Below are positions 11,946 through 48,330 of a DNA stretch of 64,000 nt, piece by piece. Below the pieces are notes generated by a model, which did not search any database, was not told where the DNA came from, and saw nothing but the letters and a program-made list of their open reading frames with translations. The stretch covers positions 248,001 to 312,000 of the IMG/VR virus record IMGVR_UViG_3300027749_002876; one strand, given 5' to 3'. The stretch's first letter is position 1, and every line of letters starts with the position of its first letter. The position numbers were made by a program, and so were the translations under genes.

Positions 11946-12206
11946 TTATTTTACACTATCAAATATCTTTTTCTGTTCGTTATACCAATCTTGCCATCCA
12001 TCTACTTTAGTTGAACATTCGTAGTATAGTGAATAGTTCTGTACAATTACTTTCAACATGTCTGTAATTGCTACTTTATCACCTTCAATCTTTTTAAGAC
12101 TTTCGCATTTCTTCATCAATTCGGGGGTAGCATTGGGAAACTTTTGTTTAACTGGAACAACGGTTGAGCATCCAGCTAATAATAATACTATTAGAAGATA
12201 CTTCAT
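11946..12206 (-). CDS. o-spanin (Rz1-like outer membrane lipoprotein)
   Basis: lipobox LLAGC, Pro and two further Cys, overlaps end of the i-spanin-like gene. Confidence 0.75.
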   Translation of the reverse strand: MKYLLIVLLLAGCSTVVPVKQKFPNATPELMKKCESLKKIEGDKVAITDMLKVIVQNYSLYYECSTKVDGWQDWYNEQKKIFDSVK

Positions 12207-12655
12207 TTCTTATCTCCCATGCTAGCGGCTTTATTTAATGTATCAATTACATCTTTAGGTACTGGGCAGTTTTCAATGTACTTGATAACTTCTTCTTTTT
12301 TGATTACTTCTTTATCAATGTATTGGATAATGTCTTTACCCTTTTCACGGATAACCTTAGTCTTTTCTACTATTTTTTCTTGTATCTCTATGTTCTTATT
12401 AGCTGATTGTGCTTCAGCTTGAGCCATTTTAGCTTCCATCTCTTTGACTTTAAGTTCCCACTCTTTATAGTCGGCTAATCCACCCTCAAGGTATACAGCA
12501 AATACAAGTACAATAATGCTACATATTTGTATAGCAAATTGATATGTTTTGACAAAAGGAATGAATCCTAGGACGAATCCTGCTATTGTGCCCAAAATAC
12601 CTAATATAAATATTATATGTATTGCGGCGTCGGGTAGTAATGATAGGATAAACAT
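12203..12655 (-). CDS. i-spanin (Rz-like)
   Basis: N-terminal TM segments, coiled coil, C-terminal CPVP; TATAAATA at 12664-12671. Confidence 0.7.
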   Translation of the reverse strand: MFILSLLPDAAIHIIFILGILGTIAGFVLGFIPFVKTYQFAIQICSIIVLVFAVYLEGGLADYKEWELKVKEMEAKMAQAEAQSANKNIEIQEKIVEKTKVIREKGKDIIQYIDKEVIKKEEVIKYIENCPVPKDVIDTLNKAASMGDKK

Positions 12656-22685: not shown

Positions 22686-22716
22686 AATATATTATCCTTT
22701 TGTTTTGTTTGTGAGA

Positions 22717-23649
22717 TTACGAACCAAATGTTGCGGCTGCAATGTAATTTCTAGCATAACCTACTCCTGTAGTATCAGTAGATACTACACCTGTATTTGA
22801 TACTAAATTGGTTATTGAAAGTGGACTACCGTTAGTGCCATAGCCAAATATAGCTTGTCCGGAGCTTCCATAGCCTGCAGCCGCCAAAGCATATCTAGTA
22901 GTACCAACACCAGTAGTATCTGTGGCAACTACGCCTGAATTAGAAACTTTATTGGTCATTGATAGTCCTGATCCAGTCCCTCCATATCCAAATATAGCTT
23001 TATCAGTTCCATAAGTTGCGGCAGCAAGATAACCTCTAGCAGTACCAACACCTGCAGTATCAGTAGCAACTACACCTGTATTTGATACTAGATTGGTTAT
23101 TGATACATCAGAAAAACCACTATCAAATCCATATCCAAAAATAGCTTTATCAGTTCCATAACCTGCGGCTGCTAATGCACCTCTAGCAGTACCTACACCT
23201 GTTGTATCTGTAGCAACTACCCCTGAATTAGAAACTTTATTGGTCATTGATATAGTATCAGATGTATACCCATATCCAAATATAGCCTTATCTGTGCCAT
23301 AACCTGCGGCAGCAAGATAACCTCTAGCAGTACCAACACCTGCAGTATCAGTAGCAACTACACCCGTGTTGCTTACTAGATTGGTTATAGATGAAGATAT
23401 ACCACTAACCAATCCATATCCAAATATTGCCTTGTCAGTGCCATAACTTGCGGCTGCCAACAAATTTCTAGCAGTACCTACACCTGAGGTATCATTAGCA
23501 ACTACACCGGTGCTTGATACAATGTTGGTTATTGATACTGCGCCGGATGAACCTGATCCATATCCAAAAATAGCTCTAATATTTGGGGGAGGTGCTGTAA
23601 TTGCAAATCCACCACTGAAATTTACACCTGAAAAAACTATGTCTGCCAT
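22717..23649 (-). CDS. six-repeat Kelch-like beta-propeller protein, copy 2
   Basis: same six-repeat architecture. Confidence 0.8.
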   Translation of the reverse strand: MADIVFSGVNFSGGFAITAPPPNIRAIFGYGSGSSGAVSITNIVSSTGVVANDTSGVGTARNLLAAASYGTDKAIFGYGLVSGISSSITNLVSNTGVVATDTAGVGTARGYLAAAGYGTDKAIFGYGYTSDTISMTNKVSNSGVVATDTTGVGTARGALAAAGYGTDKAIFGYGFDSGFSDVSITNLVSNTGVVATDTAGVGTARGYLAAATYGTDKAIFGYGGTGSGLSMTNKVSNSGVVATDTTGVGTTRYALAAAGYGSSGQAIFGYGTNGSPLSITNLVSNTGVVSTDTTGVGYARNYIAAATFGS

Positions 23650-23680
23650 ACTATGTTATCCTTTTGTTTTGTTTGTGAGA

Positions 23681-24637
23681 CTATCTACTGTAACTTGAGG
23701 CTGCTAGTTCTTGTCTAGCAGTACCGACACCAGTTGTATCCGTAGCAACTACACCCGTATTTGATACCAGGTTAGTGATTGCTGTTACTGTAGCAGATCC
23801 ATCATTTACACTACCATATCCAAAAATAGCTTTATCTGCACCGTATCCTGCGGCAGCCGGGTTTGCTCTTACGGTACCTACACCTGTAGTATCAGTAGCT
23901 ACTACACCTGTGTTACTTACTAAGTTGGTCACATTTGTAACAGGATATCCTACTCCATATCCAAATATAGCTTTATCAGTGCCATAAGTTGCGGCTCCTA
24001 ACTGACTTCTAGCGGTTCCAACTCCCGTAGTGTCTGTAGCAACTACACCCGTATTTGATACTAAGTTGGTCATTGATACTCGGGTAAAACCATTATCGGC
24101 TCCATATCCAAAAATAGCTTTGTCAGTTCCATAACCAGTGGCCGCAAGAGCTTGTCTAGCAGTACCAACACCTGTAGTATCTGTAGCAACAACACCTGTA
24201 TTTGACACTAGGTTGGTTATTGAGTACACGGTACTGCTTGTAGCACCATACCCAAATATAGCTTGTCCAGAGCTACCATATCCTGCGGCTGCTATATAAC
24301 TCCTAGCAGTACCTACACCTGTTGTATCACTAGCAACTACACCGGTGTTTGATACTAGATTGGTTACTGATTGATATACATTAGTATTATTCCTTCCATA
24401 ACCAAATATAGCTTTATCTGTACCATATACAGTGGCTGCTAGATTTACCCTAGTAGTGCCAACACCTGCAGTATCAGTAGCGACAACGCCTGTATTTGAT
24501 ACTAGGTTAGTTATTGATACATAAAGATTAGTGACAGTTGAACCATATCCAAATATTGCCTTAGCTGAGGGTGGAGGAGGTGTAATGCTAATCCCAGTAC
24601 CAATTGTTATTCCTGATCCAAATATTATATCTGCCAT
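23681..24637 (-). CDS. six-repeat Kelch-like beta-propeller protein, copy 3
   Basis: same six-repeat architecture. Confidence 0.8.
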   Translation of the reverse strand: MADIIFGSGITIGTGISITPPPPSAKAIFGYGSTVTNLYVSITNLVSNTGVVATDTAGVGTTRVNLAATVYGTDKAIFGYGRNNTNVYQSVTNLVSNTGVVASDTTGVGTARSYIAAAGYGSSGQAIFGYGATSSTVYSITNLVSNTGVVATDTTGVGTARQALAATGYGTDKAIFGYGADNGFTRVSMTNLVSNTGVVATDTTGVGTARSQLGAATYGTDKAIFGYGVGYPVTNVTNLVSNTGVVATDTTGVGTVRANPAAAGYGADKAIFGYGSVNDGSATVTAITNLVSNTGVVATDTTGVGTARQELAASSYSR

Positions 24638-24665
24638 ACTATCCTTTTATGTTATTTTTTATATA

Positions 24666-25031
24666 CTACACTTCAAGCCAAGATGTTGTATCTTCATCCC
24701 ATTTATACATTTTATCATCTGTTGGCATTGGTACTGGTGAGTCCCACAAGCATTTAGTTTCATTTAATGTCCATGAATTGTAAGGCTTTGGTGGTATGAA
24801 TGCGTCAAGTGTTTCATCATAAGTGTACCCAATACCAGCATAGTTTTTGCGATACGGTGTACCACTGTTTGAATGAACACCACCATAAGTGTTGTAACTT
24901 GTGCGCTTGCAGATTTGACCGCGGACTTCACCGTAATGTTGTTCCCAATCAATATTGTTTTCCCCTTCATCTTTACCTACTATAACTTCAGTAACAATAT
25001 TATTTTCATTTAAAAATGCGTAATGTGCCAT
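24666..25031 (-). CDS. conserved phage protein, possible fibre/appendage assembly factor
   Basis: MAHYAFL...RKNYAGIGYTYD...FIPPKP...W; follows Gly-rich gene; ATAAATA at 25059-25065. Confidence 0.55.
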   Translation of the reverse strand: MAHYAFLNENNIVTEVIVGKDEGENNIDWEQHYGEVRGQICKRTSYNTYGGVHSNSGTPYRKNYAGIGYTYDETLDAFIPPKPYNSWTLNETKCLWDSPVPMPTDDKMYKWDEDTTSWLEV

Positions 25032-25072
25032 GTTTTTTCCTTTTTTAATTATTAATACTATTTATGCTAAAT

Positions 25073-27283
25073 TTAGAAGGTAATAGTTCCTGTACCGGCA
25101 GTAAATCTATACACTCTGTAGCCAGAACGAGATGGTTGGTCATAAGTTAAACCACTACCAATTGTTAGGGCAGGGTAACTGGTTGGATAAGCAATAATAA
25201 CTACTCCTGATCCACCGTTCCATCCAACGCTACCGGCATTAGAAGTTCTAGATCCGCCTCCGCCGTTGCCTGAATTTGCTGTAGCATCTCCACTAACAGT
25301 ATTAGACCAATAAGCCTGACCCCCTGCCGAATATGCAACATCTGAACCAGTAATGCCTTGTAAGGCGGCGCCTCCTCCGGTACCGCCTCCGGTTACACCG
25401 GTATCTATATCAGTTTTAGATTGACCAACTCCATTAGAACCACCTCCACCGGATCCTATCCAACCTCTATAGACACCTACATTAGTTGATGTACCTCCAT
25501 TAAATCCTTGACCGGATGTTGCTGTTCCACCTGCCATAGCTCCCGGAGTGTTGGTTGAACCATAAGAAGCTCCGCCTCCAGAACCACCACTACCACCGGG
25601 GTTAGTTAAGCCTGCCCCATATCCTCCACCGATTGCGGTATATCCAGTTAAAACTGAGTTAGTTCCGGCGCCAGCATTACCAGAGGTTTGTTGTCCTGCA
25701 CTTCCTCCTGCGCCCACGGTGACTGTATAGGAACCACTGAATGAAGCTGTAGCATAACCACCACCTACCATACCACCAGCACCTCCACCACCACCAGAAC
25801 CACCGCCTCCACCTGCTACCACAAGATATTCAGAAAGAGTTGAAGGTGCTTCTGTAGTAATACTATTACTTGGTGCACTTGGACTACTCGTACCAACGCT
25901 ATTTGTTGCTGTAACTGTAAATGTATAACTAGTAGAACCAGTTAAACCAGTCATATTAATAGTACCACTACCTGCTTGGCTTAATGTACCGGTGATTCCA
26001 CCTGGACTACTTGTTGCTGTATAACTTGTAATTGTAGCACCGCCGTTGCTTGCTGGTTGAGTAAATGAAACTGTAGCTGTAGTTGCACCAGTAGCTGTTG
26101 CTGTACCTATTGTTGGAGCTCCGGATACTGTAGGTGCTGCAACAGTAATTGTTCCTGTACCCGCAGTAAATGTATATATTGTGTTTCCACCTGAAGTTGT
26201 TTTAGTATATGTTAGTCCTACACTAATTGATGATAAGTCAGCATAACTAGATGGATAGGAAATGATAACAATACCAGAGCCACCGTTAACTGTTTGTCGT
26301 TGTGGTGATACACCGCCGGCGCCTCCACCTGTATTTGTAGTTCCGTCTGTAGCTGATGCGGCTCCTGCTCCTCCACCTTGCCCACCAGTACCTCCGCCAC
26401 CTAAACCGCCAATACCCTTAAGTGTATTCCATGTTGTGTAATCTGCACCTGCACCACCACCACCTGCATAGTATGTAGATGTTCCGGTAATACTTGAAGC
26501 AAGACCTACACCTCCATTACCTGCTTGCCCTGCTGTTAAGTTGGCACCAACTGCGCCGGCGCCACCGCCTCCACCGCCTCCGCGATAACTGCCATTTTGA
26601 GAATCACCGCCGTTATTACCTTGACCAACTGTGCCAGTACCGCCATAATCAAAATATCCGCCAGCTCCTCCACCCGAACCACCATTCAAGCCATTAGAAT
26701 CAGCATAAGCACCACCGCCACCTAATGAAGTAATTGATGAGAACACGCTATCACCTCCATTTGCAGTTCCAACTCCACCTGCACCAACCGTTACTGTAAA
26801 TGTACCACTGACAGAAAATCCTGAAGCTGTTCTGTACCCGCCGGCTCCGCCTCCTCCGCCATGATATGCACCAGCACATCCGCCGCCACCTGCGACTACA
26901 AGGTAATTAACAGATGATGGTGCTGACGGTGCTGATGTAGTAATACTATTACTTGCACTACTTGCATTACTTGTTCCTATTGCATTGGTTGCTGTAACTG
27001 TAAATGTATAACTAGTAGAACCAGTTAAACCACTAACAGTAATAGTACCACTACCTGCTTGACTTAATGTACCGGTGATTCCACCGGGACTGCTTGTAGC
27101 TGTATAACTTGTTATAGTTGAGCCGCCATTACTTGCAGGTTGAGTAAATGCCACTGTGGCTGTAGTTGAACCAGTAGACGTTGCAGTACCTATTGTAGGT
27201 GCACCCGGTACTGAGGGTGGTGGAGGTGTAATACTAACTCCACCTGAAATTGATATTCCGCCTGTAAATACGATATCCGCCAT
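25073..27283 (-). CDS. virion-associated protein with two FN3 + glycine-rich domain units
   Basis: Start moved to MADIVF at 27283 (AAGGAA RBS); 2x [PGAPTIGTAT...YTFTVTATN FN3 + YLVVAGGG...GGSGIVII Gly-rich domain]. Confidence 0.8.
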   Translation of the reverse strand: MADIVFTGGISISGGVSITPPPPSVPGAPTIGTATSTGSTTATVAFTQPASNGGSTITSYTATSSPGGITGTLSQAGSGTITVSGLTGSTSYTFTVTATNAIGTSNASSASNSITTSAPSAPSSVNYLVVAGGGGCAGAYHGGGGGAGGYRTASGFSVSGTFTVTVGAGGVGTANGGDSVFSSITSLGGGGAYADSNGLNGGSGGGAGGYFDYGGTGTVGQGNNGGDSQNGSYRGGGGGGGAGAVGANLTAGQAGNGGVGLASSITGTSTYYAGGGGAGADYTTWNTLKGIGGLGGGGTGGQGGGAGAASATDGTTNTGGGAGGVSPQRQTVNGGSGIVIISYPSSYADLSSISVGLTYTKTTSGGNTIYTFTAGTGTITVAAPTVSGAPTIGTATATGATTATVSFTQPASNGGATITSYTATSSPGGITGTLSQAGSGTINMTGLTGSTSYTFTVTATNSVGTSSPSAPSNSITTEAPSTLSEYLVVAGGGGGSGGGGGAGGMVGGGYATASFSGSYTVTVGAGGSAGQQTSGNAGAGTNSVLTGYTAIGGGYGAGLTNPGGSGGSGGGASYGSTNTPGAMAGGTATSGQGFNGGTSTNVGVYRGWIGSGGGGSNGVGQSKTDIDTGVTGGGTGGGAALQGITGSDVAYSAGGQAYWSNTVSGDATANSGNGGGGSRTSNAGSVGWNGGSGVVIIAYPTSYPALTIGSGLTYDQPSRSGYRVYRFTAGTGTITF

Positions 27284-27320
27284 GATATATTCTTCCTTTA
27301 TAGTATTTAGCAAAAAACAA

Positions 27321-27342
27321 AAAAGGCTCAAAAAGAGCCTTT
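27321..27342 (-). terminator. intrinsic terminator, AGGCTC/GAGCCT family
   Basis: AAAAGGCTC-AAAAA-GAGCCTTT hairpin. Confidence 0.75.
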
Positions 27343-27362
27343 TTATTCAATCTCAATGGAGA

Positions 27363-28247
27363 TTAGAAGCGATGTGTTACACCAACTCCAACTTGTTTTA
27401 CGTCATTTGTTGTGCCTTTAGCGTCAACATTACGATAGTTGACACCTAAACTAGTACGCTTACTGAAGTTATAATCAGCACCCATTGCATAAGCTTTTAC
27501 ATCAGTATTTGTTTTACCATAACTAGCTTTTGCTGTGATTGCACCAAATTGCTGGCTTGCACCAATCAAATCACCAGTACGTGCTACGGCACCTTTGTCA
27601 TCACTATGTGTGTAAAATACTTGTGTATTGCCTAATTTTGCGCTACCAGCATACACTGTGCTTTTCTCAACACCTTGAGTATATTGTGCAACTGTTGCGT
27701 TAATACCAAACAATTTTGCACTTGCACTATAGCTAGTTGCTTCTGTACCTACACCATTTTGTGTGCGGTCATAAGTTGCAGTTACACCCTTCATTGGTGT
27801 TAATGCAAAGAATGTACCATTGCTGATACGCAGACCACGCAAGTTATGTACATCACCTGCAACACTACCATACAATGTGCCAAAAGCGTCATTGTTAGTG
27901 ATTGCTAAAAAGTGACTGTGTAGATTGCGACCCAAGTCAACACTACCAATACTATTTACTAAGCCGATTGTTGATTGACGATCACCTAGTTTAGTTGCGG
28001 CGCCACCTGTTGGATCATTAGCTGCCAAACTTGTATCTAATACTACACGAGCCTTCAAACCTGCACCAATGTTTTCTGTAGCAGAAAGTGTGATGTTGCT
28101 TGTTGGGTCAGTAGCTAGACTTGTTTTGCTAATAGCACCAGTTTTAGTATTGTCAACAAATTCGCTGATTTTACCATTTAAACTAACTTGTGCTGTAGCA
28201 ACCATTGTTGTTGCTGCCAATAATGTCGCTATTGCGATTTTCTTCAT
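27363..28247 (-). CDS. Gram-negative trimeric porin
   Basis: signal peptide MKKIAIATLLAATTMVATA, ENIGAGLKA, DRQSTIGL..GSVDLGR, GADYNFSKRT, C-terminal VGVTHRF beta-signal. Confidence 0.88.
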   Translation of the reverse strand: MKKIAIATLLAATTMVATAQVSLNGKISEFVDNTKTGAISKTSLATDPTSNITLSATENIGAGLKARVVLDTSLAANDPTGGAATKLGDRQSTIGLVNSIGSVDLGRNLHSHFLAITNNDAFGTLYGSVAGDVHNLRGLRISNGTFFALTPMKGVTATYDRTQNGVGTEATSYSASAKLFGINATVAQYTQGVEKSTVYAGSAKLGNTQVFYTHSDDKGAVARTGDLIGASQQFGAITAKASYGKTNTDVKAYAMGADYNFSKRTSLGVNYRNVDAKGTTNDVKQVGVGVTHRF

Positions 28248-28361
28248 AAGATTTTCCTTTAAAAATAAACCTGATTTCTCAGGCTAGACTAATATTTATG
28301 TTGTTTTTTATTGTTGATATAAAATAGTTGTTTGCGTAATAACAACGAGTTTAACGTGGAT

Positions 28362-28381
28362 AAAGGCTCTTTCGAGCCTTT
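28362..28381 (-). terminator. intrinsic terminator, AGGCTC/GAGCCT family
   Basis: AAAGGCTC-TTTC-GAGCCTTT hairpin. Confidence 0.7.
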
Positions 28382-28399
28382 GTTTTTGTGGTTGTTTGA

Positions 28400-29341
28400 T
28401 TATGCGTAACCGTAACTTGCGGCTGCTAGTCCACTTCTAGCAGTACCGACACCTGTAGTATCTGTAGCAACTACCCCGGTGTTTGATACTAGGTTGGTCA
28501 ACGATAGATAACTTTCTCTACCCCCGTATCCAAATATAGCAGTATCAACTCCATAGCCAGCGGCTGCTAGATAAGTTCTACCAGTACCGACAGCGGTAGT
28601 ATCTGTAGCAACAACTCCTGTGTTTGATACTAGGTTGGTCATTCCGTAATACGGGCTACCACCAGCTCCTAAACCAAATCCAAAGATAGCTTTATCGGTG
28701 CCAAAAGTTGCGGCGGCTAACGCATATCTGGCCTGCCCTACACCTGTTGTATCTGTAGCAACTACACCTGTATTTGATACTTTATTGGTTACTGATGTAG
28801 TGGTAGGCGTAGCAGAGTATCCATATCCAAAAATAGCTTTATCGGTACCATAACCTGCGGCTGCAGGGTTACTCCTAGCAGTGCCAACACCGGCTGTGTC
28901 GTTAGCAACTACACCTGTGTTACTTACTAGATTGGTTATTGCTGTTCTAACCCAGCTACCATTATTGTATATACCATAACCAAAGATGGCTTTATCTGTT
29001 CCATAGCCTGCGGCTGCTAGTCCACTTCTAGCAGTACCGACACCTGTAGTATCTGTAGCAACTACACCGGTATTTGATACTTTGTTGGTTATTGCGGTCT
29101 GTGGAGTACCATATCCATATATAGCTTTATCACTACCGTAGCCTGCGGCAGCTGGTTCGCTTCTAGCTGTACCAACACCTGTAGTATCTGCGGCAACTAC
29201 CCCTGTGTTACTTACTAGATTGGTCATTGATAAAGAAGGACCATTAGTACCATATCCAAATATTGCCTTACTTGTTGGGGGAGGAGGTTGTGGTGTTACA
29301 CTCAATCCACCCGTAAATGTTAGTCCACCTGTAAAATCCAT
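28400..29341 (-). CDS. six-repeat Kelch-like beta-propeller protein, copy 4
   Basis: same six-repeat architecture. Confidence 0.8.
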   Translation of the reverse strand: MDFTGGLTFTGGLSVTPQPPPPTSKAIFGYGTNGPSLSMTNLVSNTGVVAADTTGVGTARSEPAAAGYGSDKAIYGYGTPQTAITNKVSNTGVVATDTTGVGTARSGLAAAGYGTDKAIFGYGIYNNGSWVRTAITNLVSNTGVVANDTAGVGTARSNPAAAGYGTDKAIFGYGYSATPTTTSVTNKVSNTGVVATDTTGVGQARYALAAATFGTDKAIFGFGLGAGGSPYYGMTNLVSNTGVVATDTTAVGTGRTYLAAAGYGVDTAIFGYGGRESYLSLTNLVSNTGVVATDTTGVGTARSGLAAASYGYA

Positions 29342-29372
29342 AATATATTATCCTTTTGTTTTGTACTTCATA

Positions 29373-30317
29373 TTAAGTTGATCCGTAACTTGCGGCGGCT
29401 AGATGATACCTAGCAGTACCCACACCGGTTGTATTTGTAGCTACTACACCAGTATTTGATACCAGGTTGGTTATGGATGTGACATTAATCACACTACTAT
29501 ATCCATATCCAAATATAGCTTTATCATTATTATAAGTTGCGGCAGCTAATCCAAGCCTTGCAGTACCAACTCCAGTTGTATCCGTAGCAACAACACCAGT
29601 GTTTGATACTAGATTAGTTACTGCTGTATAACTAACGCCACCATTAAGAAAGCCGTAGCCAAATATGGCTTTATCAGTTCCATAACCTACGGCTGCTAGC
29701 TCACCTCTAGCAGTACCAACACCGGTAACATCATTGGCTACTACACCCGTATTTGATACTAGGTTAGTTAGTGAATAAGTTACGCTAGATTGAGTAGTAC
29801 CATAACCAAATATAGCAGTACCAGTTCCATAAGTTGCGGCTGCCAATCCAACTCTAGCTGTACCAACACCTGTAACATCATTTCCAACAACACCCGTATT
29901 TGATACTAGGTTGGTCATTGAATAAACGCCACCACCACCATAACCAAAAATAGCTTTATCTGTACCATAACCAGTGGCCGCAAGATTATTTCTAACAGTA
30001 CCAACACCAGTTGTATCTGTAGCAACAACACCTGTATTTGACACTAGATTAGTTATTGATACAGTACTTGCTCCAGTATATCCATATCCAAATATAGCTT
30101 TGTCGTTTCCATAGCCTGCGGCTGCTAGATAGTATCTAGCAGTGCCAACACCGGTAGTATCACCTGCAACTACACCTGTATTTGATACTTTGTTAGTCAT
30201 TGATACTGAGGGTGTACCTCCATATCCAAAAATAGCATATGTACTATATGAGGGTGGAGGTAGAGTTACTGAGTAACCACCACTAAATGTTACACCTGAA
30301 AAAACCATATCTGCCAT
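29373..30317 (-). CDS. six-repeat Kelch-like beta-propeller protein, copy 5
   Basis: same architecture; GATAAATA at 30336-30343 and AAGGAG RBS. Confidence 0.8.
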   Translation of the reverse strand: MADMVFSGVTFSGGYSVTLPPPSYSTYAIFGYGGTPSVSMTNKVSNTGVVAGDTTGVGTARYYLAAAGYGNDKAIFGYGYTGASTVSITNLVSNTGVVATDTTGVGTVRNNLAATGYGTDKAIFGYGGGGVYSMTNLVSNTGVVGNDVTGVGTARVGLAAATYGTGTAIFGYGTTQSSVTYSLTNLVSNTGVVANDVTGVGTARGELAAVGYGTDKAIFGYGFLNGGVSYTAVTNLVSNTGVVATDTTGVGTARLGLAAATYNNDKAIFGYGYSSVINVTSITNLVSNTGVVATNTTGVGTARYHLAAASYGST

Positions 30318-31384: not shown

Positions 31385-32065
31385 TCACATGTTGGCATGA
31401 AATATAGCTACTTTAACCAAACTATCTATGCTATTGACTAAAGGAATACTGTTTTGTTCTGTTTCTTTAACCGCTAGTGGTAATTCTGTACAACCTAGTA
31501 CTACTGCACTTGCCCCACGAACAATCAAACTATCTACCACCGGCATCAACATATTATGTGAGTTAACCATATCTCCTGCCTTAATTAAATCTATAGCAGG
31601 TTGTACTATGTTATTCATTTCTTCTATACTAGGAACAATACAATCCCAATCAGTTAAACGATTTTGATATAAGCCTAATTCAATTGTAGCTTGTGTTCCC
31701 ATTATACCTATTGTACCAGTAACATTTATATCACGTAATGAATTAGCTACACTATCTACAATGTGTAAAATAGGAACTTTAAATTTAACTAATTCATCAT
31801 ACCAGTAATGCGCTGTATTGCAAGGTATGACAATTATAGTACATCCAAGTGATTTCAATACTTGTATACCTTGTAGTAAGTATGGTAGTGGTCTGTCATC
31901 ACCATTACGTATACTTGTACTACGATCAGGTGTACGTGGTTCATTCCATAACACGAATGGAATATGTTCTTGGTCACAACTTGCAGGTGTTTGTTGTATA
32001 AGTCTGTTTATAAATTCAGCACTGGCTGCTGGACCCATTCCACCTAGTATACCTAAACGTTTCAT
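31385..32065 (-). CDS. aspartate/glutamate racemase family protein
   Basis: GILGGMGPAAS, both catalytic cysteines PCNTAH and GCTELP. Confidence 0.92.
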   Translation of the reverse strand: MKRLGILGGMGPAASAEFINRLIQQTPASCDQEHIPFVLWNEPRTPDRSTSIRNGDDRPLPYLLQGIQVLKSLGCTIIVIPCNTAHYWYDELVKFKVPILHIVDSVANSLRDINVTGTIGIMGTQATIELGLYQNRLTDWDCIVPSIEEMNNIVQPAIDLIKAGDMVNSHNMLMPVVDSLIVRGASAVVLGCTELPLAVKETEQNSIPLVNSIDSLVKVAIFHANM

Positions 32066-32670
32066 TTTTTATTAAACAATAAACTAGAAGCGATTATCAT
32101 CGCTGTTTGTGCGGCTTCTACATCTGTGGGCTGTTCTTTCCAACCTACACTAATCTGTCCAATGAACACGCCGGGTTCAGCTGGTACGCTAATACGACAC
32201 ATATAGTTTACACCGTATTCTTTGTATACAAAGCCAATAAGACTTTGTGGTTTTGAATATGGACTACAAGGAATCTTACCTGACATTAAACCAATGACAT
32301 CATTGTTGTTGTCATAGTTTTTACTAAATAATCCAACTTCTAACCCGTCATTTCTTTTATCTCTACCACCATTGCGTGTAGCTAAGTAAACAACTTTTCG
32401 TGTGTTAATTAATGTGTTGACTTCAAGAAAGGCAACCATTTCTACTTCAGTATTTTTTAATAAGAAATTGTATGCCTCATCATACTTACCGTTCATTTTA
32501 GGTAATGCTTGCTGGGCACGATAACTTGCTAAAAAGGCATCTTTTTCCGTATAAACTATCCAACCACCAAAGCCTAGTATACAGAGAAACACAACGGTAA
32601 ATAGGCGAAATGGACTTTCGCCTATATAGGTTAATAAACTAAAGAGAAAATCTTTAAGTTTGTCCACCAA
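32062..32670 (-). CDS. single-TM protein resembling T4 holin T (periplasmic GAF-like domain)
   Basis: 202 aa; amphipathic N-terminus, one TM, WIVYTEKDAFLASYR and GVNYMCRI..GVFIGQISVGWK resemble T4 gpT segments as recalled. Confidence 0.55.
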   Translation of the reverse strand: MVDKLKDFLFSLLTYIGESPFRLFTVVFLCILGFGGWIVYTEKDAFLASYRAQQALPKMNGKYDEAYNFLLKNTEVEMVAFLEVNTLINTRKVVYLATRNGGRDKRNDGLEVGLFSKNYDNNNDVIGLMSGKIPCSPYSKPQSLIGFVYKEYGVNYMCRISVPAEPGVFIGQISVGWKEQPTDVEAAQTAMIIASSLLFNKK

Positions 32671-33928
32671 TAGCTACCTCTTTGTCACAGACAAAAGCTG
32701 TTACTGCTACGTTACCATGTACGTGACTTGCTGTGCGGATCATATCCATTAATGGATCAACCGCAATTAGTAATACTAATACAGCCTCACTTGGTAGTTT
32801 TAGTAAGTCACAAACAACTGCTACTGTAGCAACTGTAAGAATACCAGTTGTTCCTGCACTTGCTAATCCAGCTAAGATACTACCAAATAACACAACTAAT
32901 AAACCAGTTACTCCCATAGGTGCACCGTAGATGTTGGCAATAAACACTGTAGCAATTGCGTAGTATACAATACTACCAATACGGTTAACTGTGAAACTTA
33001 GTGGTACGGTTAGTTCTACACCAGTTCTATCAAAATGTAATTTGTGTAGTGATTCTTGTGCATAGGGTATACATGCTAGACTACTACGTGAACTAACAGC
33101 AACAATCAATGTTTCTTTAGTCTCACGAATAACAGTCATTAGGCTCAATCCTGAACGTTGCCAAATAACAATAGTGCCAGCAATAACAACAAGTAATCCA
33201 CCAATGGCCTGTTGCATGATAAACTCAACCATGGTTAAGAAAATACCAACTCCAACCTTACCAACTTGGCTACTAATCATTGCCAATAATGCAAACGGTA
33301 GAAAGTAGTTTAAGAATTTAAAAATACTGATACTAGCCTGTTGTACGCTCTTTAGTATATCCACTAGCATTTCTTGACCAGTCGTTTTTAAGTTACCTAA
33401 TGCAATACCAAAGATTAAACAGAAGATAACAATCTTTAAGCTTTCGCCGGCGGCTAGTGTATTAAAAATATTTTCTGGAATAAACTTCTGTGCCATCTGC
33501 ATTGGGTCAACGTGTGGTGCAACAGGCATTGGTTCTTTTAGAGTAATGTTGAGATCGCTTCCAGATTCTTTATCGTTAACAATTGCACCAAGTTGTGCTT
33601 GTTTTGCAGGAGTCATTTCGCTGCCGGTCAATGCAACAGTACCAACACCAATTACTGCAGCCAAGAACATACTACCAACAAAACCAATGATAATTTTGCG
33701 TATCATTGCGGCACTGCCTTCTTTTTGTAGTAAACTGATAACACCAACCAAAATAGTTGCAAGTAAGAAAGGTATTACCACAACTTTAAGCAAGCTGATG
33801 TAAATTCCACCAACACTTTCAAAATTCATACTTTGTGCAGGTGCATATACTCCTGCCAATACTCCAAGTATAATTGAACTTAAAATAGTCCACGGACTAG
33901 ATAAGAAGTTTTTTAAATTAAATTTCAT
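32654..33928 (-). CDS. dicarboxylate/amino acid:cation symporter (DAACS family)
   Basis: multiple TM helices, YISLLKVVVIP, IPENIF, SSRSSLACIP, AVDPLMDMIRT. Confidence 0.92.
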   Translation of the reverse strand: MKFNLKNFLSSPWTILSSIILGVLAGVYAPAQSMNFESVGGIYISLLKVVVIPFLLATILVGVISLLQKEGSAAMIRKIIIGFVGSMFLAAVIGVGTVALTGSEMTPAKQAQLGAIVNDKESGSDLNITLKEPMPVAPHVDPMQMAQKFIPENIFNTLAAGESLKIVIFCLIFGIALGNLKTTGQEMLVDILKSVQQASISIFKFLNYFLPFALLAMISSQVGKVGVGIFLTMVEFIMQQAIGGLLVVIAGTIVIWQRSGLSLMTVIRETKETLIVAVSSRSSLACIPYAQESLHKLHFDRTGVELTVPLSFTVNRIGSIVYYAIATVFIANIYGAPMGVTGLLVVLFGSILAGLASAGTTGILTVATVAVVCDLLKLPSEAVLVLLIAVDPLMDMIRTASHVHGNVAVTAFVCDKEVAIGGQT

Positions 33929-33940
33929 TTTATTTCCTAA

Positions 33941-34759
33941 TTATTTCTTTTCAGCTTTGTATCGTTCCATTAACTTTTTAGTGTCAATGTTGTTGTATTC
34001 ATTTTTAATAACGTAATTAATAATGCTTAACAATTGCAGTGATTTAGGATTTACTGCGATAGCAATATTATCAACACTGTCACTGATTGTGATACTCTTT
34101 GTGCTAATTGCGGCTTCTGGTTTTTCAAAAGCGATTTTCTTAATCTCAAATTCATCACGATAAGCGGCTGCGATATCACCACGTGTAACTTTGTCAATAA
34201 TCACATCCCATTTATCTTCCGGGAGAAATACAGCATTAGGGAAATTAGTACGTGCAAATGTGTCATAGCTTGAGTTGCGAATGAAACTTATTTTACCATT
34301 GAAATTTCTAATCACTTGATATACTTCACGACCCTGACTGTTTTGGCTTAACCATAAACGATTGATAACTAAACTTTGTCTAAGTTTAATATAAGGATCA
34401 CTGAATCTAACTACTTGTAGTCTGGGCCCAGTTACAGATAATTTACTAACTGCAACGTCGGCACGACCATCTCTTACTTGCTCAACGACTTCGGCAAAAC
34501 TTTCTGCATCTCGTCTAAACTGTACTGGAACTCCAAGCATTACGCCAATTCTCCGTGCAATTTCAACGTCAAGACCATGTATATCATCCTCGCCCCCACT
34601 GAAGAAGGGAGGGTTATCTTTTTTGGTCATTGCCACAATAAGAACGTTTGCTTTCTTAATTGCGGCAATATCATTGGGTAGTGGTACGGTACTAGTTGGT
34701 AATTGTGCGTGGACAACTGAACTAAACAATACACATAATAATAGTAGTAGTTTTTTCAT
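33941..34759 (-). CDS. periplasmic amino-acid substrate-binding protein (family 3)
   Basis: signal peptide, DNPPFF, GLDVEIARRIG, GRADVAVSKLSVTGPR, FSDPY; ATAAATA 7 nt upstream. Confidence 0.9.
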   Translation of the reverse strand: MKKLLLLLCVLFSSVVHAQLPTSTVPLPNDIAAIKKANVLIVAMTKKDNPPFFSGGEDDIHGLDVEIARRIGVMLGVPVQFRRDAESFAEVVEQVRDGRADVAVSKLSVTGPRLQVVRFSDPYIKLRQSLVINRLWLSQNSQGREVYQVIRNFNGKISFIRNSSYDTFARTNFPNAVFLPEDKWDVIIDKVTRGDIAAAYRDEFEIKKIAFEKPEAAISTKSITISDSVDNIAIAVNPKSLQLLSIINYVIKNEYNNIDTKKLMERYKAEKK

Positions 34760-34801
34760 AGTGTTGTATTTATGCTATGAAAATACTAACTTAGCTAAAA
34801 T

Positions 34802-35422
34802 CTACTTATTTGCTAACGGATTGTCCATAGCTTTTTGTATTTTGTTATCAACTTCTCTTTTTAGTGTCTCTACTTCACGGTTAATTTCTCTACGTGCCGC
34901 AGTAAATTCACTGTTAATTTCTTTACGGGTTGATTCCATATCCTTGCGAATTGTGTTAGCTTCGTTTCTAGCTCTTTCTAAGTCTTCACGAACGGCCTTA
35001 CGCATATCACGCATTTCGCTTTCAGTTTCACGCTGTGCGTTCTTAACACTACGTTCTACTTGTTCTGTGACAGTTTCATTACGGCGAATATCATTCTTTA
35101 AGTCAGTTTTGATATCACGGGTGTAATCAGCACCTTTTTGACTGTTTTCCTCAATGACAGCTAATCGCTTATCAAATCCACTCAAGTCTGGTGCACTGTA
35201 TTCAGCTATCTTTTTCTTCATACCCACATAGTCTTTATACACTTCAAAGGCTCCGTATAATCCACCTAGCGTAGATGACACGATTGTGGCTGCTACCATA
35301 AGTTTAGCTGGGGTAAATTCATACCCACCAATACTGATAACAGTATCTTTACTAGCATACTTTTTTGCGGCTGCTTCAAGTTCATCAACTTTTGCGTTTA
35401 CGTCTTTTATTTCTTCTGTCAT
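34802..35422 (-). CDS. membrane-anchored coiled-coil protein
   Basis: hydrophobic segment, long R/E/K heptads, ends DNPLANK. Confidence 0.7.
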   Translation of the reverse strand: MTEEIKDVNAKVDELEAAAKKYASKDTVISIGGYEFTPAKLMVAATIVSSTLGGLYGAFEVYKDYVGMKKKIAEYSAPDLSGFDKRLAVIEENSQKGADYTRDIKTDLKNDIRRNETVTEQVERSVKNAQRETESEMRDMRKAVREDLERARNEANTIRKDMESTRKEINSEFTAARREINREVETLKREVDNKIQKAMDNPLANK

Positions 35423-40471: not shown

Positions 40472-40502
40472 ACTATATTATCCTTTAATGTATTTATCAA
40501 AA

Positions 40503-40528
40503 AGAATAGGCTCCGAAGAGCCTATTCT
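40503..40528 (-). terminator. terminator of tmRNA locus, AGGCTC/GAGCCT family
   Basis: AGAATAGGCTC-TTCG-GAGCCTATTCT on minus strand plus T-run. Confidence 0.8.
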
Positions 40529-40529
40529 G

Positions 40530-40870
40530 CTATTTTCTGTTACGAGGGATAACTCCCCTAGCTGCCTTTATCAGGCCGCAATGCTAAACTGTGAGTCGTT
40601 TGCGGTTACTTTTTTTGCTTCTACGACCGGGTTGCCCCAATCCTACGGCTTCTGCTTTGCCGAGCTGTCCACTCTGTTACTTGTTGCCCTGTCGAAACTT
40701 TTCAGGCCCATCATAAAAAGAATATTAAAAAAACCAAAATAATAACACTCAATATTCCACATGTATATTGATATTTTACTTCAGGATCCATATTGTCTCC
40801 TTATGGTGGACCTGGGGAGATTCGCACTCCCGTCCAGAACACCTTTCCCGTTACTTCATACAGCAATAAC
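40530..40870 (-). ncRNA. ssrA: circularly permuted (two-piece) tmRNA
   Basis: Acceptor piece ends GACGGGAGTGCGAATCTCCCCAGGTCCACCA (3' end 40804). Coding piece starts GGGCCTGAAAAGTTTCGAC (40709). Acceptor stem GGGCCTG/CAGGTCC has G3:U70. Tag frame 40603-40568 reads ANDSQFSIAA then TGA TAA. Outer ends approximate. Confidence 0.92.
40711..40791 (-). CDS. 26-aa hydrophobic peptide encoded in the tmRNA intervening segment
   Basis: TAAGGAG-5nt-ATG; MDPEVKYQYTCGILSVIILVFLIFFL; ends 1 nt before the coding-piece 5' G. Confidence 0.6.
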   Translation of the reverse strand: MDPEVKYQYTCGILSVIILVFLIFFL

Positions 40871-40871
40871 T

Positions 40872-43800
40872 TCAATTGTATTTAGCATTGAAATACTTTT
40901 TTAACCAAGGCCAATCATAACTTAGACGCAATTTGCCTAACTCACCATTGACTTGTTCAACATATTCTACAGCATGTTTTGCACCATCGATACTATATTG
41001 GGCATAGTCACCCTCACCCACAGTTGACCATATCTTTAATCGTTGTTTGCTATCAGGACTATCATCTAGTTTTAACTTGATAACTTCACGGAAACTGGTA
41101 CGCCATGTACTAAATTCATCAGTGTTATATCGTGCTACACCCGAATTAATCTCTACAACTTCATGCTCATTGTCTAATGTAAAGTCCAAACCTTTACCCA
41201 TATTACTTAACGTAATCTGTTTATGGTATGCAATCATAGCTTGGTGACCATACACTAATCCATTTACAGGGTTACTTGCGTAGAAGATATAATGTTTAGG
41301 TATCTGTAATCTATCTGGTTGCCATGTAAAATCAAATTTACTATTGATACGTAACTTAGCAAACACTGTAAACATCCAAGGTGTTTCACTAGCTGTTGCG
41401 GCTGCATGATAAGCCTGAACACGACCATTTACACCATCAACACGAACAACACGATTAGGCAATCCTTTAGTCACGTTTAGTAAGTGTTCATAGTTCTCAT
41501 CAGCTCCAACTTCACCGTTGCTAAGGAAAACTATATCCAGTGGCTTAGACTGTATTAGTTTATCAGCTTTACTGATGTATGGATAATCATACAACTCTTT
41601 CTTAACATATTCTTTAGCTTCTTTCGGCACAATAATACGTGTGCCACCGGTAGTAGTAATTAATATGTTTTTAGATTCTTTAGACCATAAACTTATTGGT
41701 TCATTGTCAACAACTTTTATTTCTTTGTTGTCTTCCGTGACAAACGTAGCATAAGGCCAATTAAAATCAGTATTAGTAATAGAGACATGTGTATCGCTTT
41801 CAGTTATAAAGTTTGGAGCAGGTAAACGCTTTACTCTTTGATGTTGGTTAAAGTTAATTTTCTCAATTTTTTCTAAATTATCTAATTCTTCTATCAGCAT
41901 ACGTAATTTATTGACATTGATAAAGAATGTATCACCAAACTTTTGCAAGTTACTAGGGAATACATGCAATTGTTCCAGTGAAAACGGATCACATATGTAT
42001 GTAAAATCAAAATTAGTATAGTCACATATAGAACTACATACCCAAACATAATGTTCTTTTTTAATACCTAACTCATACAACATATTTTTTAATGTAGTTA
42101 GGTAATCATTATCATATTTAATAACTTCAACATTCTTTTTAGTTTTATTTTCTAATAATGATGTAATATTATCAGTAGTATCATTACCGTAATCAATCAA
42201 ATAAACGTCATACAAGCAGTTACTAGCGACCGCTCGCTTTGTTTTTACAAAGTTAAGATTACTTAAATGTTCTATAATTTTAATATGTTTAGTATCTTCT
42301 ATGAATGTTTCTTTATTGACCATAAAGGTAGTTCCCCAATGGCTCCATTGTGTTCCAAATATATGAACCATTTTCATTTGCCATGGGCTAGGATAATAGT
42401 CAAATGTAAAATTTGTATAATCTAATTCACTATTCAGTATCCAACATACTTCAGTTTCAGACTTGTTAAGACAACGATTAATAGTATCAACCCAGCTATT
42501 TAAATAACGTGTTTTTTGTATTTTTGGATAGCGTTGTTTTAATTCTTCGAATCTTTGTTGGCTTTCATTGTTGTTCTTATCAACAAAAAACATTGATAGG
42601 TTACTGTCGATTTCCACTGTTTGTTCTTCAACATAGTTAAATTCTCTATGACCCATAGTGTATAATGGTCCGTTAACATAATAAGTTTGTGTGTTCTTAC
42701 TATATTCGTTACCAAATACATTTATGTGCCTAAAGTTTTCACTATTTGGTCTCCAGTTAAAATCAAATTTATCATAATTTAAGTCAGGGTTGATGACCCA
42801 AAATACTTCATCCGGATGTTCTGCAATCAAATCCTCAAGTGTTGTTTTAAGTTTATAACGATTAACTGTATTACGGTTTGTAGTAATTGTAGTTTCTGTT
42901 CGTTCCATCAACACAACTTCAGTTGCGCCTGGCACAGTGTATCTAGGACCATTATCTGCCCACTGGTAAATTTGAGGAGGACTATGTGGATTAGGTCTCC
43001 AACTAAAATCAAATGTATTGTAATCGTCTACATTACTCACATGCCAATTTTTTAATTCTGGTTTAGTAATAGCAACAATGCTTTTAACATATTTTCGTTC
43101 TGATGCCCCATAAGTCCAATATTCTACTGTAGGTTCTACTGTAGCGTCATTCCATTTGTTACCAAAAACATATACATATGGTGGACTTTTGGGATCAGGT
43201 CTCCATGAATAATCAAAATTGTCAACAGGTATTACTACTAGCCACTTGTTCATATCAGGTAATGTAGTTGCTACTACATCATCCATATATTTAAATTCAG
43301 TAGCACCTGGACAAGTGTAAGTGATAGTAGGTTCACGTACAGCATCGTTATATTTGTTACCCCATACATAGATATACGCAGGTTCACGCGGATCAGGTCT
43401 CCAGCTAAAATCAAATGAAGATTTATCAACTGGTATAAGAGTTTCCCATCTATTAAGCTGTGGCTTTACATCAACTATACCTACATATTTGCGTTCTGTT
43501 GCACCTGGTACATGATATTCTAATGTAGGTTCTACTTCTGCCGGAACATATTTGTTTCCCCATGTATATATGTAGGGTTTTTCAGTCTCATCGGGATGCC
43601 AACTAAGTTGGTCTTCTACTACAGCCTGATGTATAACCCAATTATCCTTTGTAGGCAGTGCTTTTGCTCTGGTTGCGTCAATATATTTTACAGCACTGTT
43701 CTCATTTACACCGTCTGCATAATATACAGGGCCGCCCGTCTTTTGCCATTGTGTTCCAAATTTATATATGTATGGTATATCTTCGATATCAGGATGCCAA

Positions 43801-46396: not shown

Positions 46397-46397
46397 T

Positions 46398-48320: not shown

Positions 48321-48330
48321 GGTATATTAA

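What the first reader, a model, noticed from the sequence alone, without database searches (positions are those of the whole stretch)
31385..34773. Four-gene operon coupling amino-acid uptake, a T4-holin-like protein and an amino-acid racemase: a candidate metabolite-controlled lysis-timing system
Seen: one late-type promoter (34767-34773), then substrate-binding protein, DAACS symporter, a 202-aa single-TM protein (17-nt overlap) and an Asp/Glu racemase with both catalytic Cys (4-nt overlap). No ABC permease or ATPase is present. Known: T4 holin T has one TM and a periplasmic GAF-like domain through which lysis inhibition is signalled; D-amino acids modulate peptidoglycan. The holin resemblance is from my recollection of the T4 sequence. 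Inference: the phage may make, release and sense a D-amino acid, or sense nutrient level, to set lysis time. The more mundane reading is an auxiliary nitrogen-uptake module inserted around the holin.
Basis: partly seen in the sequence, partly recalled or inferred. Interest (0 to 1): 0.8.

Follow-up and report, generated by a model that had tools for sequence, protein, structure and literature searches.

The report
T4-type holin inside amino-acid uptake operon
A large freshwater phage carries its T4-type lysis-timing gene (holin) inside a three-gene amino-acid uptake and racemase module taken from bacteria; the four genes are probably transcribed together late in infection, but nothing found here shows that the nutrient genes control lysis.

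Summary
Four tightly packed minus-strand genes (31385-34759) encode a periplasmic SBP_bac_3 binding protein, a DAACS (SDF) symporter, a 201/202-aa single-TM protein and an Asp/Glu-type racemase with both catalytic Cys.

- **Promoter:** a T4-late-promoter-like CATAAATA lies 7 nt upstream. It is conserved in relatives and tied to gene starts across the window.
- **Holin:** There is no Pfam PF11031 hit, yet profile-profile comparison gives 95.5% probability and E=1.4e-8 over the full length. A pLDDT-96 model has one TM helix plus a GAF-like domain, and its best TM-score is to the T4 holin T periplasmic domain. Relatives sit in lysis cassettes, and one T4-like phage (S13) has this gene instead of canonical t.
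- **Metabolic genes:** the other three are a captured bacterial module. SBP+DAACS pairs occur in three bacterial phyla, often with a convergent racemase.
- **Linkage:** 68 of 77 relatives keep SBP-DAACS directly upstream of the holin, but holin-only lineages are nested at least four times in that clade, and alleles recombine within the cassette.

Best reading: auxiliary uptake genes placed around, and co-expressed with, a T-type holin. Metabolite-gated lysis is not excluded but unsupported.

The parts
34767..34774 (-). T4-late-promoter-like motif CATAAATA, 7 nt upstream of the SBP start codon
   Evidence: Sequence read. ATAAATA is positionally tied to gene starts (12 of 23 copies; random mean 0.46). 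The motif is conserved upstream of the SBP gene in relatives with otherwise unrelated upstream DNA.
33941..34759 (-). Periplasmic substrate-binding protein (SBP_bac_3), 272 aa, with a cleavable signal peptide
   Evidence: Pfam PF00497 E=1.1e-17. Best solved relatives are amino-acid ABC binding proteins. 37-41% identical to SBPs that precede the same DAACS subfamily in bacteria.
32654..33928 (-). Divergent DAACS (SDF family) secondary transporter, 424 aa
   Evidence: Pfam PF00375 E=2.5e-64. Nearest solved structures are aspartate/glutamate transporters. The TM8 Asp and Arg are kept, but NMDGT is NRIGS and the distal Asp is Asn, as in its bacterial relatives.
32062..32670 (-). T-type (class III-like) holin homologue, 201/202 aa. 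Likely start is GTG at 32667. TM helix at about 32548-32613; periplasmic GAF-like domain at 32065-32547.
   Evidence: hhalign against the T4 holin T family: 95.5%, E=1.4e-8, 194 columns, with controls. AlphaFold2 pLDDT 96.3. Foldseek best TM-score to 6px4 holin T. Relatives lie in lysis cassettes. Start codon.
31385..32065 (-). PLP-independent Asp/Glu-type amino-acid racemase, 226 aa, with Cys82 and Cys192
   Evidence: Pfam PF01177 E=1.7e-38. NCBIfam cysteate racemase CuyB 212 bits (cutoff 190) and TIGR00035. Solved aspartate racemases 3s7z and 1jfl.
11946..12655 (-). Other lysis genes of the same phage, about 20 kb away: i-spanin-like (12203-12655) and o-spanin-like lipoprotein (11946-12206)
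   Evidence: PHROG Rz-like spanin hits. Lipobox LLAGC and TM plus coiled coil. Their homologues flank the T-like gene and the endolysin in L151 and L119.

Best explanation
The 201/202-aa gene is this phage's T-type holin. It has a short cytoplasmic N-terminus, one transmembrane helix and a large periplasmic GAF-like domain, like T4 gpT. By inference it accumulates in the inner membrane late in infection and then opens it for the endolysin.

In this lineage of ~330-350-kb freshwater phages, a bacterial module has been built in around it. A periplasmic SBP_bac_3 protein and its partner DAACS transporter lie immediately upstream, and an Asp/cysteate-type racemase lies immediately downstream.

All four genes appear to be read from one T4-late-type promoter. 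The holin start codon lies inside the end of the transporter gene, so holin synthesis is probably translationally coupled to it.

The module most likely imports an acidic amino acid (aspartate-, glutamate- or cysteate-like) and interconverts L and D forms to feed host catabolism during late infection, as an auxiliary metabolic function. Its position next to the holin is a consequence of insertion into a late-expressed lysis neighbourhood, comparable to cargo genes placed in front of the lysis genes of lambdoid phages, rather than a demonstrated control circuit.

Shown: gene content, homologies, fold, conservation of linkage, bacterial origin of the module.
Inferred: holin activity, co-transcription, substrate, absence of a regulatory link.
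For: Holin identity:
- hhalign of a 57-sequence family alignment against 24 PF11031 holins gives 95.5% probability, E=1.4e-8, collinear over 194 columns.
- Controls: 40 column-shuffled versions give a best E of 0.028, the reversed alignment 0.12, and the periplasmic domain alone 1.3e-5.
- The model has pLDDT 96.3, with a TM helix at 20-41 and an alpha/beta domain.
- Among Foldseek PDB hits the highest TM-scores are to the T4 holin T periplasmic domain, 6px4_B, 0.51/0.69. BFVD hits include annotated T/class III holins.
- Context of relatives: directly after a GH108 endolysin (42% id); between an o-spanin-like lipoprotein and an endolysin (70% id, L151); in L119 the order is endolysin, i-spanin, o-spanin, SBP, SDF, T, racemase.
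- 16 of 80 related loci have an endolysin within 6 kb.
- The Straboviridae phage S13 has no PF11031-type t anywhere in its genome, nor at the canonical site, but has one member of this family.

Captured module:
- The best bacterial racemase relatives (45% id) sit tail-to-tail with an SBP-SDF pair that is 37-41% identical to the phage genes, with no T-like gene.
- The same SBP-SDF pairing occurs in Agarilytica, Planktothrix (also with a convergent racemase) and Microvirga.
- The Bilophila cysteate cluster likewise joins an SDF transporter with the racemase CuyB (PMC11193023).

One unit:
- 68 of 77 evaluable relatives have SDF abutting or overlapping T, and 55 have the racemase adjacent.
- The overlap is 8-29 nt in all but the basal clade.
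- The cassette is inverted as a whole in some relatives.
- Promoter motif.
Against: - No Pfam, PHROG-holin or BLAST-level match to T4 gpT, so the homology is remote.
- Foldseek E-values do not separate holin T from ordinary GAF domains.
- No endolysin was found in the 64-kb window, and the spanins are 20 kb away.
- Two related jumbo contigs carry a second T-like paralogue (T2) with its own small partner gene, so T1 need not be the only or main holin in every lineage.
- The very persistent, overlapping SDF-T junction, and an SBP-T identity correlation (r=0.60) higher than SBP-SDF (r=0.22), could reflect a functional tie that this explanation ignores.
- Substrate, transcription unit and holin activity are all untested.
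Confidence: 0.6

Rival explanations
1. Metabolite-gated lysis timing. The periplasmic binding protein, with or without its ligand, contacts the holin's periplasmic GAF-like domain as antiholin RI does in T4. Alternatively, substrate-driven ion influx through the symporter alters membrane potential and hence holin triggering. Either way, nutrient or D-amino-acid level would set the time of lysis.
For: - The T-type holin has a large periplasmic domain of the kind through which T4 lysis inhibition acts (PMC11413866).
- The SBP is periplasmic and has no ABC partner.
- The SDF-T junction overlaps in nearly all relatives, and linkage persists from 58 to 100% identity and through inversion of the cassette.
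- SBP and T identities co-vary more (r=0.60) than either does with the intervening SDF.
Against: - The SBP-SDF pair and the racemase form a bacterial module with no holin, so the SBP has a sufficient role with the transporter.
- Holins 65-77% identical work in contexts without these genes and are nested at least four times in the cassette clade.
- Alleles of the four genes recombine freely.
- No interaction, ligand or timing data exist.
Confidence: 0.12
2. The cassette copy (T1) is no longer a holin. It is a membrane-anchored GAF-like sensor or accessory subunit of the SBP-DAACS transporter, and lysis is carried out by another holin (T2 or an unrelated one) elsewhere in the >300-kb genome.
For: - Two jumbo contigs carry both the T1 cassette and a T2 gene that has a conserved small partner, usually with a nearby endolysin.
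- The T1 start always overlaps the transporter gene.
- No endolysin is adjacent in the window.
Against: - T1-type proteins sit between spanin and endolysin in L151 and complete the lysis cluster in L119.
- Four other 331-353-kb contigs with the cassette showed no T2 in a conserved-pattern scan.
- Bacterial SBP-DAACS pairs need no such subunit.
- All family-conserved residues (C135, C158, G171) are kept.
Confidence: 0.1
3. The T-holin likeness is only generic GAF-domain similarity plus a TM helix, and the protein is an unrelated membrane-anchored GAF protein.
For: Foldseek ranks many GAF domains with E-values similar to or better than holin T. There is no direct HMM or BLAST match.
Against: - The profile-profile match is collinear over the N-terminus, TM helix and domain, and far above shuffled controls.
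- No Pfam GAF hit.
- Holin T gives the best TM-scores.
- Repeated lysis-cassette context, and replacement of t in S13.
Confidence: 0.05

Closest known systems
Phage T4 holin T (gene t; Pfam PF11031, PHROG 860; class III holin)
   Same: Similar length (~200-220 aa). Short N-terminal cytoplasmic part, a single TM helix and a large periplasmic alpha/beta (GAF-like) domain. Conserved periplasmic cysteines and a G-x-I/V-x-x-G/Y-W-x-x-x-P motif near the C-terminus. Profile-profile homology. Lysis genes scattered in the genome, as in T4.
   Different: About 16% identity over the profile alignment, and no PF11031 or PHROG 860 match. The conserved Cys pair (C135/C158) is placed differently from T4's C175/C207 columns. 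The family is filed as PHROG 31287, 'unknown function'. No RI or RIII partner has been identified. The gene is embedded in a transporter operon instead of following the tail-fibre genes.
Bacterial SBP_bac_3 + divergent DAACS pairs with a convergent Asp/Glu racemase (alphaproteobacterial MAGs, Planktothrix serta, Agarilytica, Microvirga)
   Same: The same three protein families in the same SBP-then-SDF order. They share derived transporter motifs (NMDGT replaced, AGTTG in HP2, distal Asp to Asn) and are 37-45% identical.
   Different: In bacteria the racemase is convergent rather than co-directional, and no T-like gene lies between. The neighbours are dCache-cyclase sensors and catabolic enzymes.
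Cysteate dissimilation cluster of Bilophila wadsworthia (CuyA, SDF transporter, CuyB racemase, RidA; PMC11193023)
   Same: An SDF-family importer paired with a PF01177 racemase. The phage racemase exceeds the NCBIfam CuyB cutoff.
   Different: No CuyA sulfo-lyase or RidA in the cassette. An SBP is present here. The substrate is unproven, and aspartate racemases match equally well.
Phage auxiliary transport genes and cargo genes placed at the lysis module (cyanophage PstS; stx in front of lambdoid S-R-Rz) - from general knowledge
   Same: Host-derived uptake or cargo genes expressed from a phage late promoter next to lysis genes.
   Different: Here the cargo flanks the holin on both sides and overlaps its start codon. 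It comprises a complete secondary transporter with binding protein and racemase.

Membership tests
T4 holin T family (PF11031 / class III holin) | Match to the family HMM (Pfam PF11031, PHROG 860) | tested here: not met
   No hit even at E<=10. A PF11031-based HMM built here gives E=0.83. The PHROG hit is 31287, 'unknown function', while T4 gpT hits PHROG 860.
T4 holin T family (PF11031 / class III holin) | Detectable homology to gpT over the whole length | tested here: met
   hhalign 95.5%, E=1.4e-8, 194 columns. Shuffled and reversed controls give E>=0.028.
T4 holin T family (PF11031 / class III holin) | Short N-terminal cytoplasmic part, one TM helix, large C-terminal periplasmic domain | tested here: met
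   One hydrophobic segment at residues ~20-41, a helix in the pLDDT-96 model, followed by a 160-residue alpha/beta domain. Orientation is inferred from homology. T4 topology is as stated in PMC11413866.
T4 holin T family (PF11031 / class III holin) | Periplasmic domain with the holin T fold | tested here: inconclusive
   6px4_B gives the best TM-scores (0.51/0.69, rmsd 4.1), but generic GAF domains have similar or better E-values.
T4 holin T family (PF11031 / class III holin) | Genomic association with endolysin and spanins | tested here: met
   Met in relatives. In the window only spanins are present, 20 kb away, and no endolysin was found.
T4 holin T family (PF11031 / class III holin) | Membrane hole formation and timed lysis; inhibition by the RI/RIII antiholins | not testable with these tools
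   Needs expression or complementation assays. RI/RIII homologues were not searched for.
DAACS / SDF transporters (PF00375) | Family HMM match, and TM8 Asp and Arg that bind the amino and acidic groups of the substrate | tested here: met
   E=2.5e-64. The alignment to aspartate transporter 9bgz keeps D...D-M-x-R-T. The residue roles come from general knowledge of GltPh.
DAACS / SDF transporters (PF00375) | Canonical cation-site motif NMDGT and the distal TM8 Asp | tested here: not met
   NRIGS replaces NMDGT and Asn replaces Asp. The change is shared with bacterial relatives that also have an SBP neighbour.
ABC-type amino-acid binding protein (SBP_bac_3) | Family HMM match with a signal peptide, and cognate ABC permease and ATPase genes | tested here: not met
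   The HMM match is met and a signal peptide is present. No ABC permease or ATPase lies in the cassette or the scanned window ORFs. The partner in phage and bacteria is a DAACS gene.
PLP-independent Asp/Glu racemase (PF01177); cysteate racemase CuyB equivalog | HMM above the curated cutoff, and two catalytic cysteines | tested here: met
   PF01177 133 bits, CuyB 212 bits against a cutoff of 190, TIGR00035 168 bits. Cys82 and Cys192 align with those of 1jfl and 3s7z.
PLP-independent Asp/Glu racemase (PF01177); cysteate racemase CuyB equivalog | Cysteate specificity and a CuyA sulfo-lyase partner | not tested
   No CuyA-like gene was seen in the cassette. The rest of the genome and enzyme activity were not examined.
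T4-type late promoter | TATAAATA element upstream of late genes, read by a gp55-type sigma factor | tested here: inconclusive
   A 7/8 match. Strong positional association and conservation. However, the element is only 4-8 nt from several start codons, no gp55/gp33 homologue was sought, and there are no transcript data.

The most novel reading that the evidence does not exclude
The phage couples lysis timing to nutrient state. The periplasmic binding protein (liganded or not) acts on the holin's periplasmic GAF-like domain as a substitute antiholin, or substrate-driven ion flux through the co-translated symporter shifts the membrane potential at which the holin fires. Cells importing an abundant acidic or D-amino acid would then lyse later, or earlier. 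This would be a superinfection-independent, metabolite-sensing form of lysis inhibition.
Probability: 0.12. Interest if true: 0.85.

Novelty: new variant of a known kind. Interest (0 to 1): 0.55.

Why it matters
1. **Holin annotation.** It assigns a function to a phage protein family now labelled 'unknown' (PHROG 31287). The family is a remote branch of the T4 holin T lineage. It is common in freshwater phages and is the only T-like gene in at least one T4-like phage (S13) that lacks canonical t. This widens the known range of class III holins and of possible lysis-inhibition systems.

2. **A testable gene arrangement.** A lysis-timing gene is nested in, and probably translationally coupled to, a host-derived nutrient importer in many ~330-350-kb environmental phages. 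This is a natural system for asking whether phages tie lysis to nutrient supply.

3. **A possible new transporter class.** It reveals a bacterial pairing of an SBP_bac_3 protein with a DAACS transporter whose cation-site residues are altered. If the two work together, this would be a binding-protein-dependent secondary transporter of a family not known to use one.

Tried and rejected
- **Direct T4 gpT comparison.** BLASTP against T4 gpT (E=0.14), Pfam/NCBIfam/PDB sequence searches of the 202-aa protein and a PF11031-derived HMM found nothing. Only profile-profile and fold comparison detect the relation.
- **DNA similarity.** blastn of the cassette against 50,697 phage records gave no match.
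- **Promoter enrichment.** Simple over-representation of TATAAATA failed (5 found, 12 expected). Positional analysis was needed.
- **Sigma-70 promoter and terminator scan.** Not informative: counts were at shuffle level.
- **Endolysin in the window.** Not found by Pfam on all ORFs of 120 aa or more, nor by phmmer with four endolysin types from relatives.
- **Viral scan with the full family alignment.** A 6-sequence alignment worked.
- **Riboswitch or other RNA element at the cassette.** No Rfam hit there.
- **'Only a generic GAF protein'.** Considered and rejected; see the rival explanations.
- **'Chance adjacency'.** Rejected because linkage holds in 68 of 77 loci.
- **Not attempted.** SBP-holin complex prediction (the tool folds single unchanged chains only), a search for RI/RIII or gp55 homologues, and checking in the model whether C135 and C158 are close enough to form a disulfide.


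Full report
**1. The window and the observation**

The window is phage DNA. It encodes a large terminase (7971-9518), a UvsX/RecA-like protein, a gp32-like protein and thymidylate synthase. GC content is about 36%. No close relative exists among 50,697 deposited phage genomes.

The window is 100% identical, over the cassette, to two IMG/VR contigs of 524 kb and 171 kb. Related contigs measure 331-353 kb, so this is a lineage of freshwater jumbo phages.

- SBP_bac_3, 33941-34759
- SDF/DAACS, 32654-33928
- a 202-aa single-TM ORF, 32062-32670
- an Asp/Glu racemase, 31385-32065

The racemase has Cys82 (IPCNTAH) and Cys192 (GCTELP), aligned with solved aspartate racemases. The holin/racemase overlap is ATGA.

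In 38 distinct related junctions the holin start is ATG (30) or GTG (8), one codon downstream of the window's TTG. The likely start is therefore GTG at 32667, giving a 14-nt overlap and 201 aa.

**2. The promoter**

Exact TATAAATA is not enriched in the window. Its position, however, is far from random:
- 12 of 23 ATAAATA copies end within 30 nt upstream of a gene start on the right strand. Random positions give a mean of 0.46 and a maximum of 4 in 2000 trials. Other 7-mers of the same composition score much lower.
- Most relatives whose DNA upstream of the SBP gene is unrelated still keep (T/C)ATAAATA 5-8 nt from the ATG; a minority carry it ~38-45 nt upstream or lack it.
- No copy lies inside the cassette.

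This supports a T4-late-type element driving one transcription unit. It also raises the possibility of leaderless or nearly leaderless late mRNAs. No transcript data or sigma-factor search back this up.

**3. What the 202-aa protein is**

Direct methods see nothing. There is no Pfam, NCBIfam or PDB sequence hit. BLASTP against T4 gpT gives E=0.14. The only family match is PHROG 31287, 'unknown function', whereas T4 gpT is PHROG 860, 'holin'.

Searching 1.8 billion cluster representatives gave 95 relatives, mostly about 200 aa. An alignment of 57 of them was compared with 24 PF11031 holins. The result was 95.5% probability, E=1.4e-8, collinear over 194 columns that span the N-terminus, the TM helix and the domain.

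Controls:

| Comparison | Result |
|---|---|
| 40 column-shuffled versions | best E=0.028 |
| Reversed alignment | E=0.12 |
| Periplasmic domain alone | E=1.3e-5 |

AlphaFold2 gives pLDDT 96.3, with an N-terminal helix, a TM helix at 20-41 and an alpha/beta domain. Foldseek against the PDB returns GAF domains. The highest TM-scores are to the periplasmic domain of T4 holin T in complex with RI (6px4_B, 0.51/0.69). Against viral models, hits beyond its own family include annotated T/class III holins. The T4 topology (small cytoplasmic N-terminus, one TM helix, periplasmic domain) is as described in PMC11413866.

**4. Genomic context of relatives supports a lysis role**

- A 42%-identical member directly follows a GH108 endolysin.
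- A 45% member follows a LysC-like gene.
- A 28% member lies four genes from a GH108 endolysin.
- A 29% member in MW202825 is two genes from a lysozyme.
- In L151 (70% identity) the gene lies between an o-spanin-like lipoprotein and an endolysin.
- In L119 (82%) the order is endolysin, i-spanin, o-spanin, SBP, SDF, T, racemase.
- 16 of 80 related loci have an endolysin within 6 kb.

The T4-like Cronobacter phage S13 has no PF11031-type gene anywhere in its 182 kb, and nothing at the canonical site between the tail-fibre genes and asiA. It has exactly one member of this family.

In the window itself an i-spanin/o-spanin pair lies at 11946-12655. No endolysin was found. The lysis genes are scattered, as in T4.

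**5. What the other three genes are**

The racemase passes the NCBIfam cutoff for cysteate racemase CuyB (212 against 190 bits). It also matches TIGR00035 and solved aspartate racemases. In Bilophila, CuyB lies beside an SDF-family importer (PMC11193023).

A scan of 185,579 species genomes with the racemase found, as its three best hits, alphaproteobacterial loci. There the racemase (45% id) is tail-to-tail with an SBP-SDF pair that is 37-41% identical to the phage proteins, with bacterial flanks and no T-like gene.

Homologues of that bacterial SDF are again preceded by an SBP_bac_3 gene in three more organisms:
- Agarilytica (Gammaproteobacteria)
- Planktothrix (Cyanobacteria), also with a convergent racemase, and with the SBP fused to PG_binding_1
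- Microvirga (Alphaproteobacteria)

The phage and bacterial transporters share derived features. They keep the TM8 Asp and Arg that bind amino-acid substrates in GltPh-type proteins (residue roles from general knowledge). NMDGT is replaced by N/C-R-I/F-G-S/P, and the distal Asp by Asn.

The three genes are therefore a captured bacterial module for import and racemisation of an acidic amino acid. The exact substrate is not established.

**6. How tight the linkage is, and what it means**

Among 80 IMG/VR loci with a T-like protein 58-100% identical to the window's:

| Arrangement | Count |
|---|---|
| SDF abutting or overlapping T | 68 of 77 evaluable |
| ...of which racemase adjacent | 55 |
| ...of which racemase displaced by an insertion | 3 |
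| ...of which no racemase | 8 |
| ...of which downstream flank too short to judge | 2 |
| No SDF upstream | 9 |
| ...of which holin alone (both flanks evaluable) | 7 |

- The overlap with SDF is 8, 14, 20 or 29 nt everywhere except in the basal clade.
- The cassette is inverted as a unit relative to its neighbours in some relatives.
- On a tree of the holins, outgroups are in lysis cassettes, the basal clade has SBP-SDF-T without the racemase, and holin-only lineages are nested in at least four well-supported places within the cassette clade.
- Identities of the four proteins to the window are discordant. L138, for example, has SBP 96, SDF 98, T 72 and racemase 68%. Correlations are SBP-SDF 0.22, SDF-T 0.32, SBP-T 0.60 and T-racemase 0.64, so alleles recombine within the cassette.
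- A second type of T-like gene (T2) is almost always followed by an overlapping small partner gene and is often near an endolysin. It coexists with the cassette in two jumbo contigs, but was not detected in four others of 331-353 kb or in the window's contigs.

**7. Conclusion**

The evidence favours a T-type holin that has acquired host-derived uptake genes on both sides. These are co-expressed late and probably translationally coupled.

A regulatory tie between nutrient sensing and lysis is attractive. It is weakly hinted at by the persistent overlap and the SBP-T co-variation. Against it stand the bacterial autonomy of the module and the holin-only relatives. It remains untested.

Noticed in passing
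window 45302-57254: A cluster of nine radical-SAM genes on both strands. It includes a B12-binding radical-SAM enzyme (46338-48320) and two with SPASM domains (53184-55594). This is unusual density for a phage, and the product is unknown.
   Followed up: no
window 40480-40905 (-): A phage-encoded tmRNA of the permuted betaproteobacterial type (Rfam RF01850 and RF04321; ARAGORN tag ANDSQFSIAA). It suggests a betaproteobacterial host.
   Followed up: no
window 33941-34759 with 32654-33928; loci L014-L016, L181-L183: An SBP_bac_3 gene directly precedes a divergent DAACS gene in the phage and in bacteria of three phyla. The cation-site motif NMDGT is replaced and the distal Asp is Asn. Neighbours are often a convergent Asp/Glu racemase and a dCache-cyclase, and the Planktothrix SBP carries PG_binding_1. 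This may be a binding-protein-dependent DAACS subfamily.
   Followed up: partly
L134 4088-5124, L137 7299-8338, L184-L229: A second T-like type (T2, about 30% identical to the window's) is almost always followed by an overlapping ~77-95-aa protein with no TM helix or signal peptide, with an endolysin 0.5-2.5 kb away. The small protein may be an antiholin-like partner. Two jumbo contigs have both T2 and the cassette.
   Followed up: partly
window 7960, 9531, 11676, 12670, 30342, 34773, 40497, 45289 and others: ATAAATA lies only 4-8 nt from several start codons (terminase, i-spanin, SBP and a radical-SAM gene), and TTGATAAATACATTA recurs four times. This may indicate leaderless late transcripts.
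   Followed up: partly
window 11676-12655 (-): An i-spanin-like gene (TM plus coiled coil) is followed by two 86-aa lipoproteins with the LLAGC lipobox. The first is an o-spanin homologue; the second is unassigned.
   Followed up: partly
window 21735-30317 (-): A run of ~310-aa paralogues built from ~45-aa repeats (NTGVV...GVGTAR...AAAGYG...KAIFGYG), with no family match. A Porin_4 outer-membrane porin gene lies at 27363-28247, and relatives also carry porins.
   Followed up: no
IMG/VR contig 3300027749_002876 (loci L101 and L138): The 524-kb contig holds two complete cassettes about 190 kb apart, with holins 72% identical. This is either a real duplication in a very large phage or a chimeric assembly of two related phages.
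   Followed up: no
window 34802-35422 (-) and loci L110-L121, L126, L129: The 206-aa TM plus coiled-coil gene upstream of the cassette lies downstream and on the opposite strand in many relatives. The four-gene cassette has therefore been inverted as a unit relative to this block.
   Followed up: partly
Cronobacter phage S13, KC954775 (L001 5989-6570): This T4-like phage has no canonical t gene. Its only T-like gene (S13_076, annotated 'hypothetical') lies next to gp24, and the record annotates no holin.
   Followed up: yes
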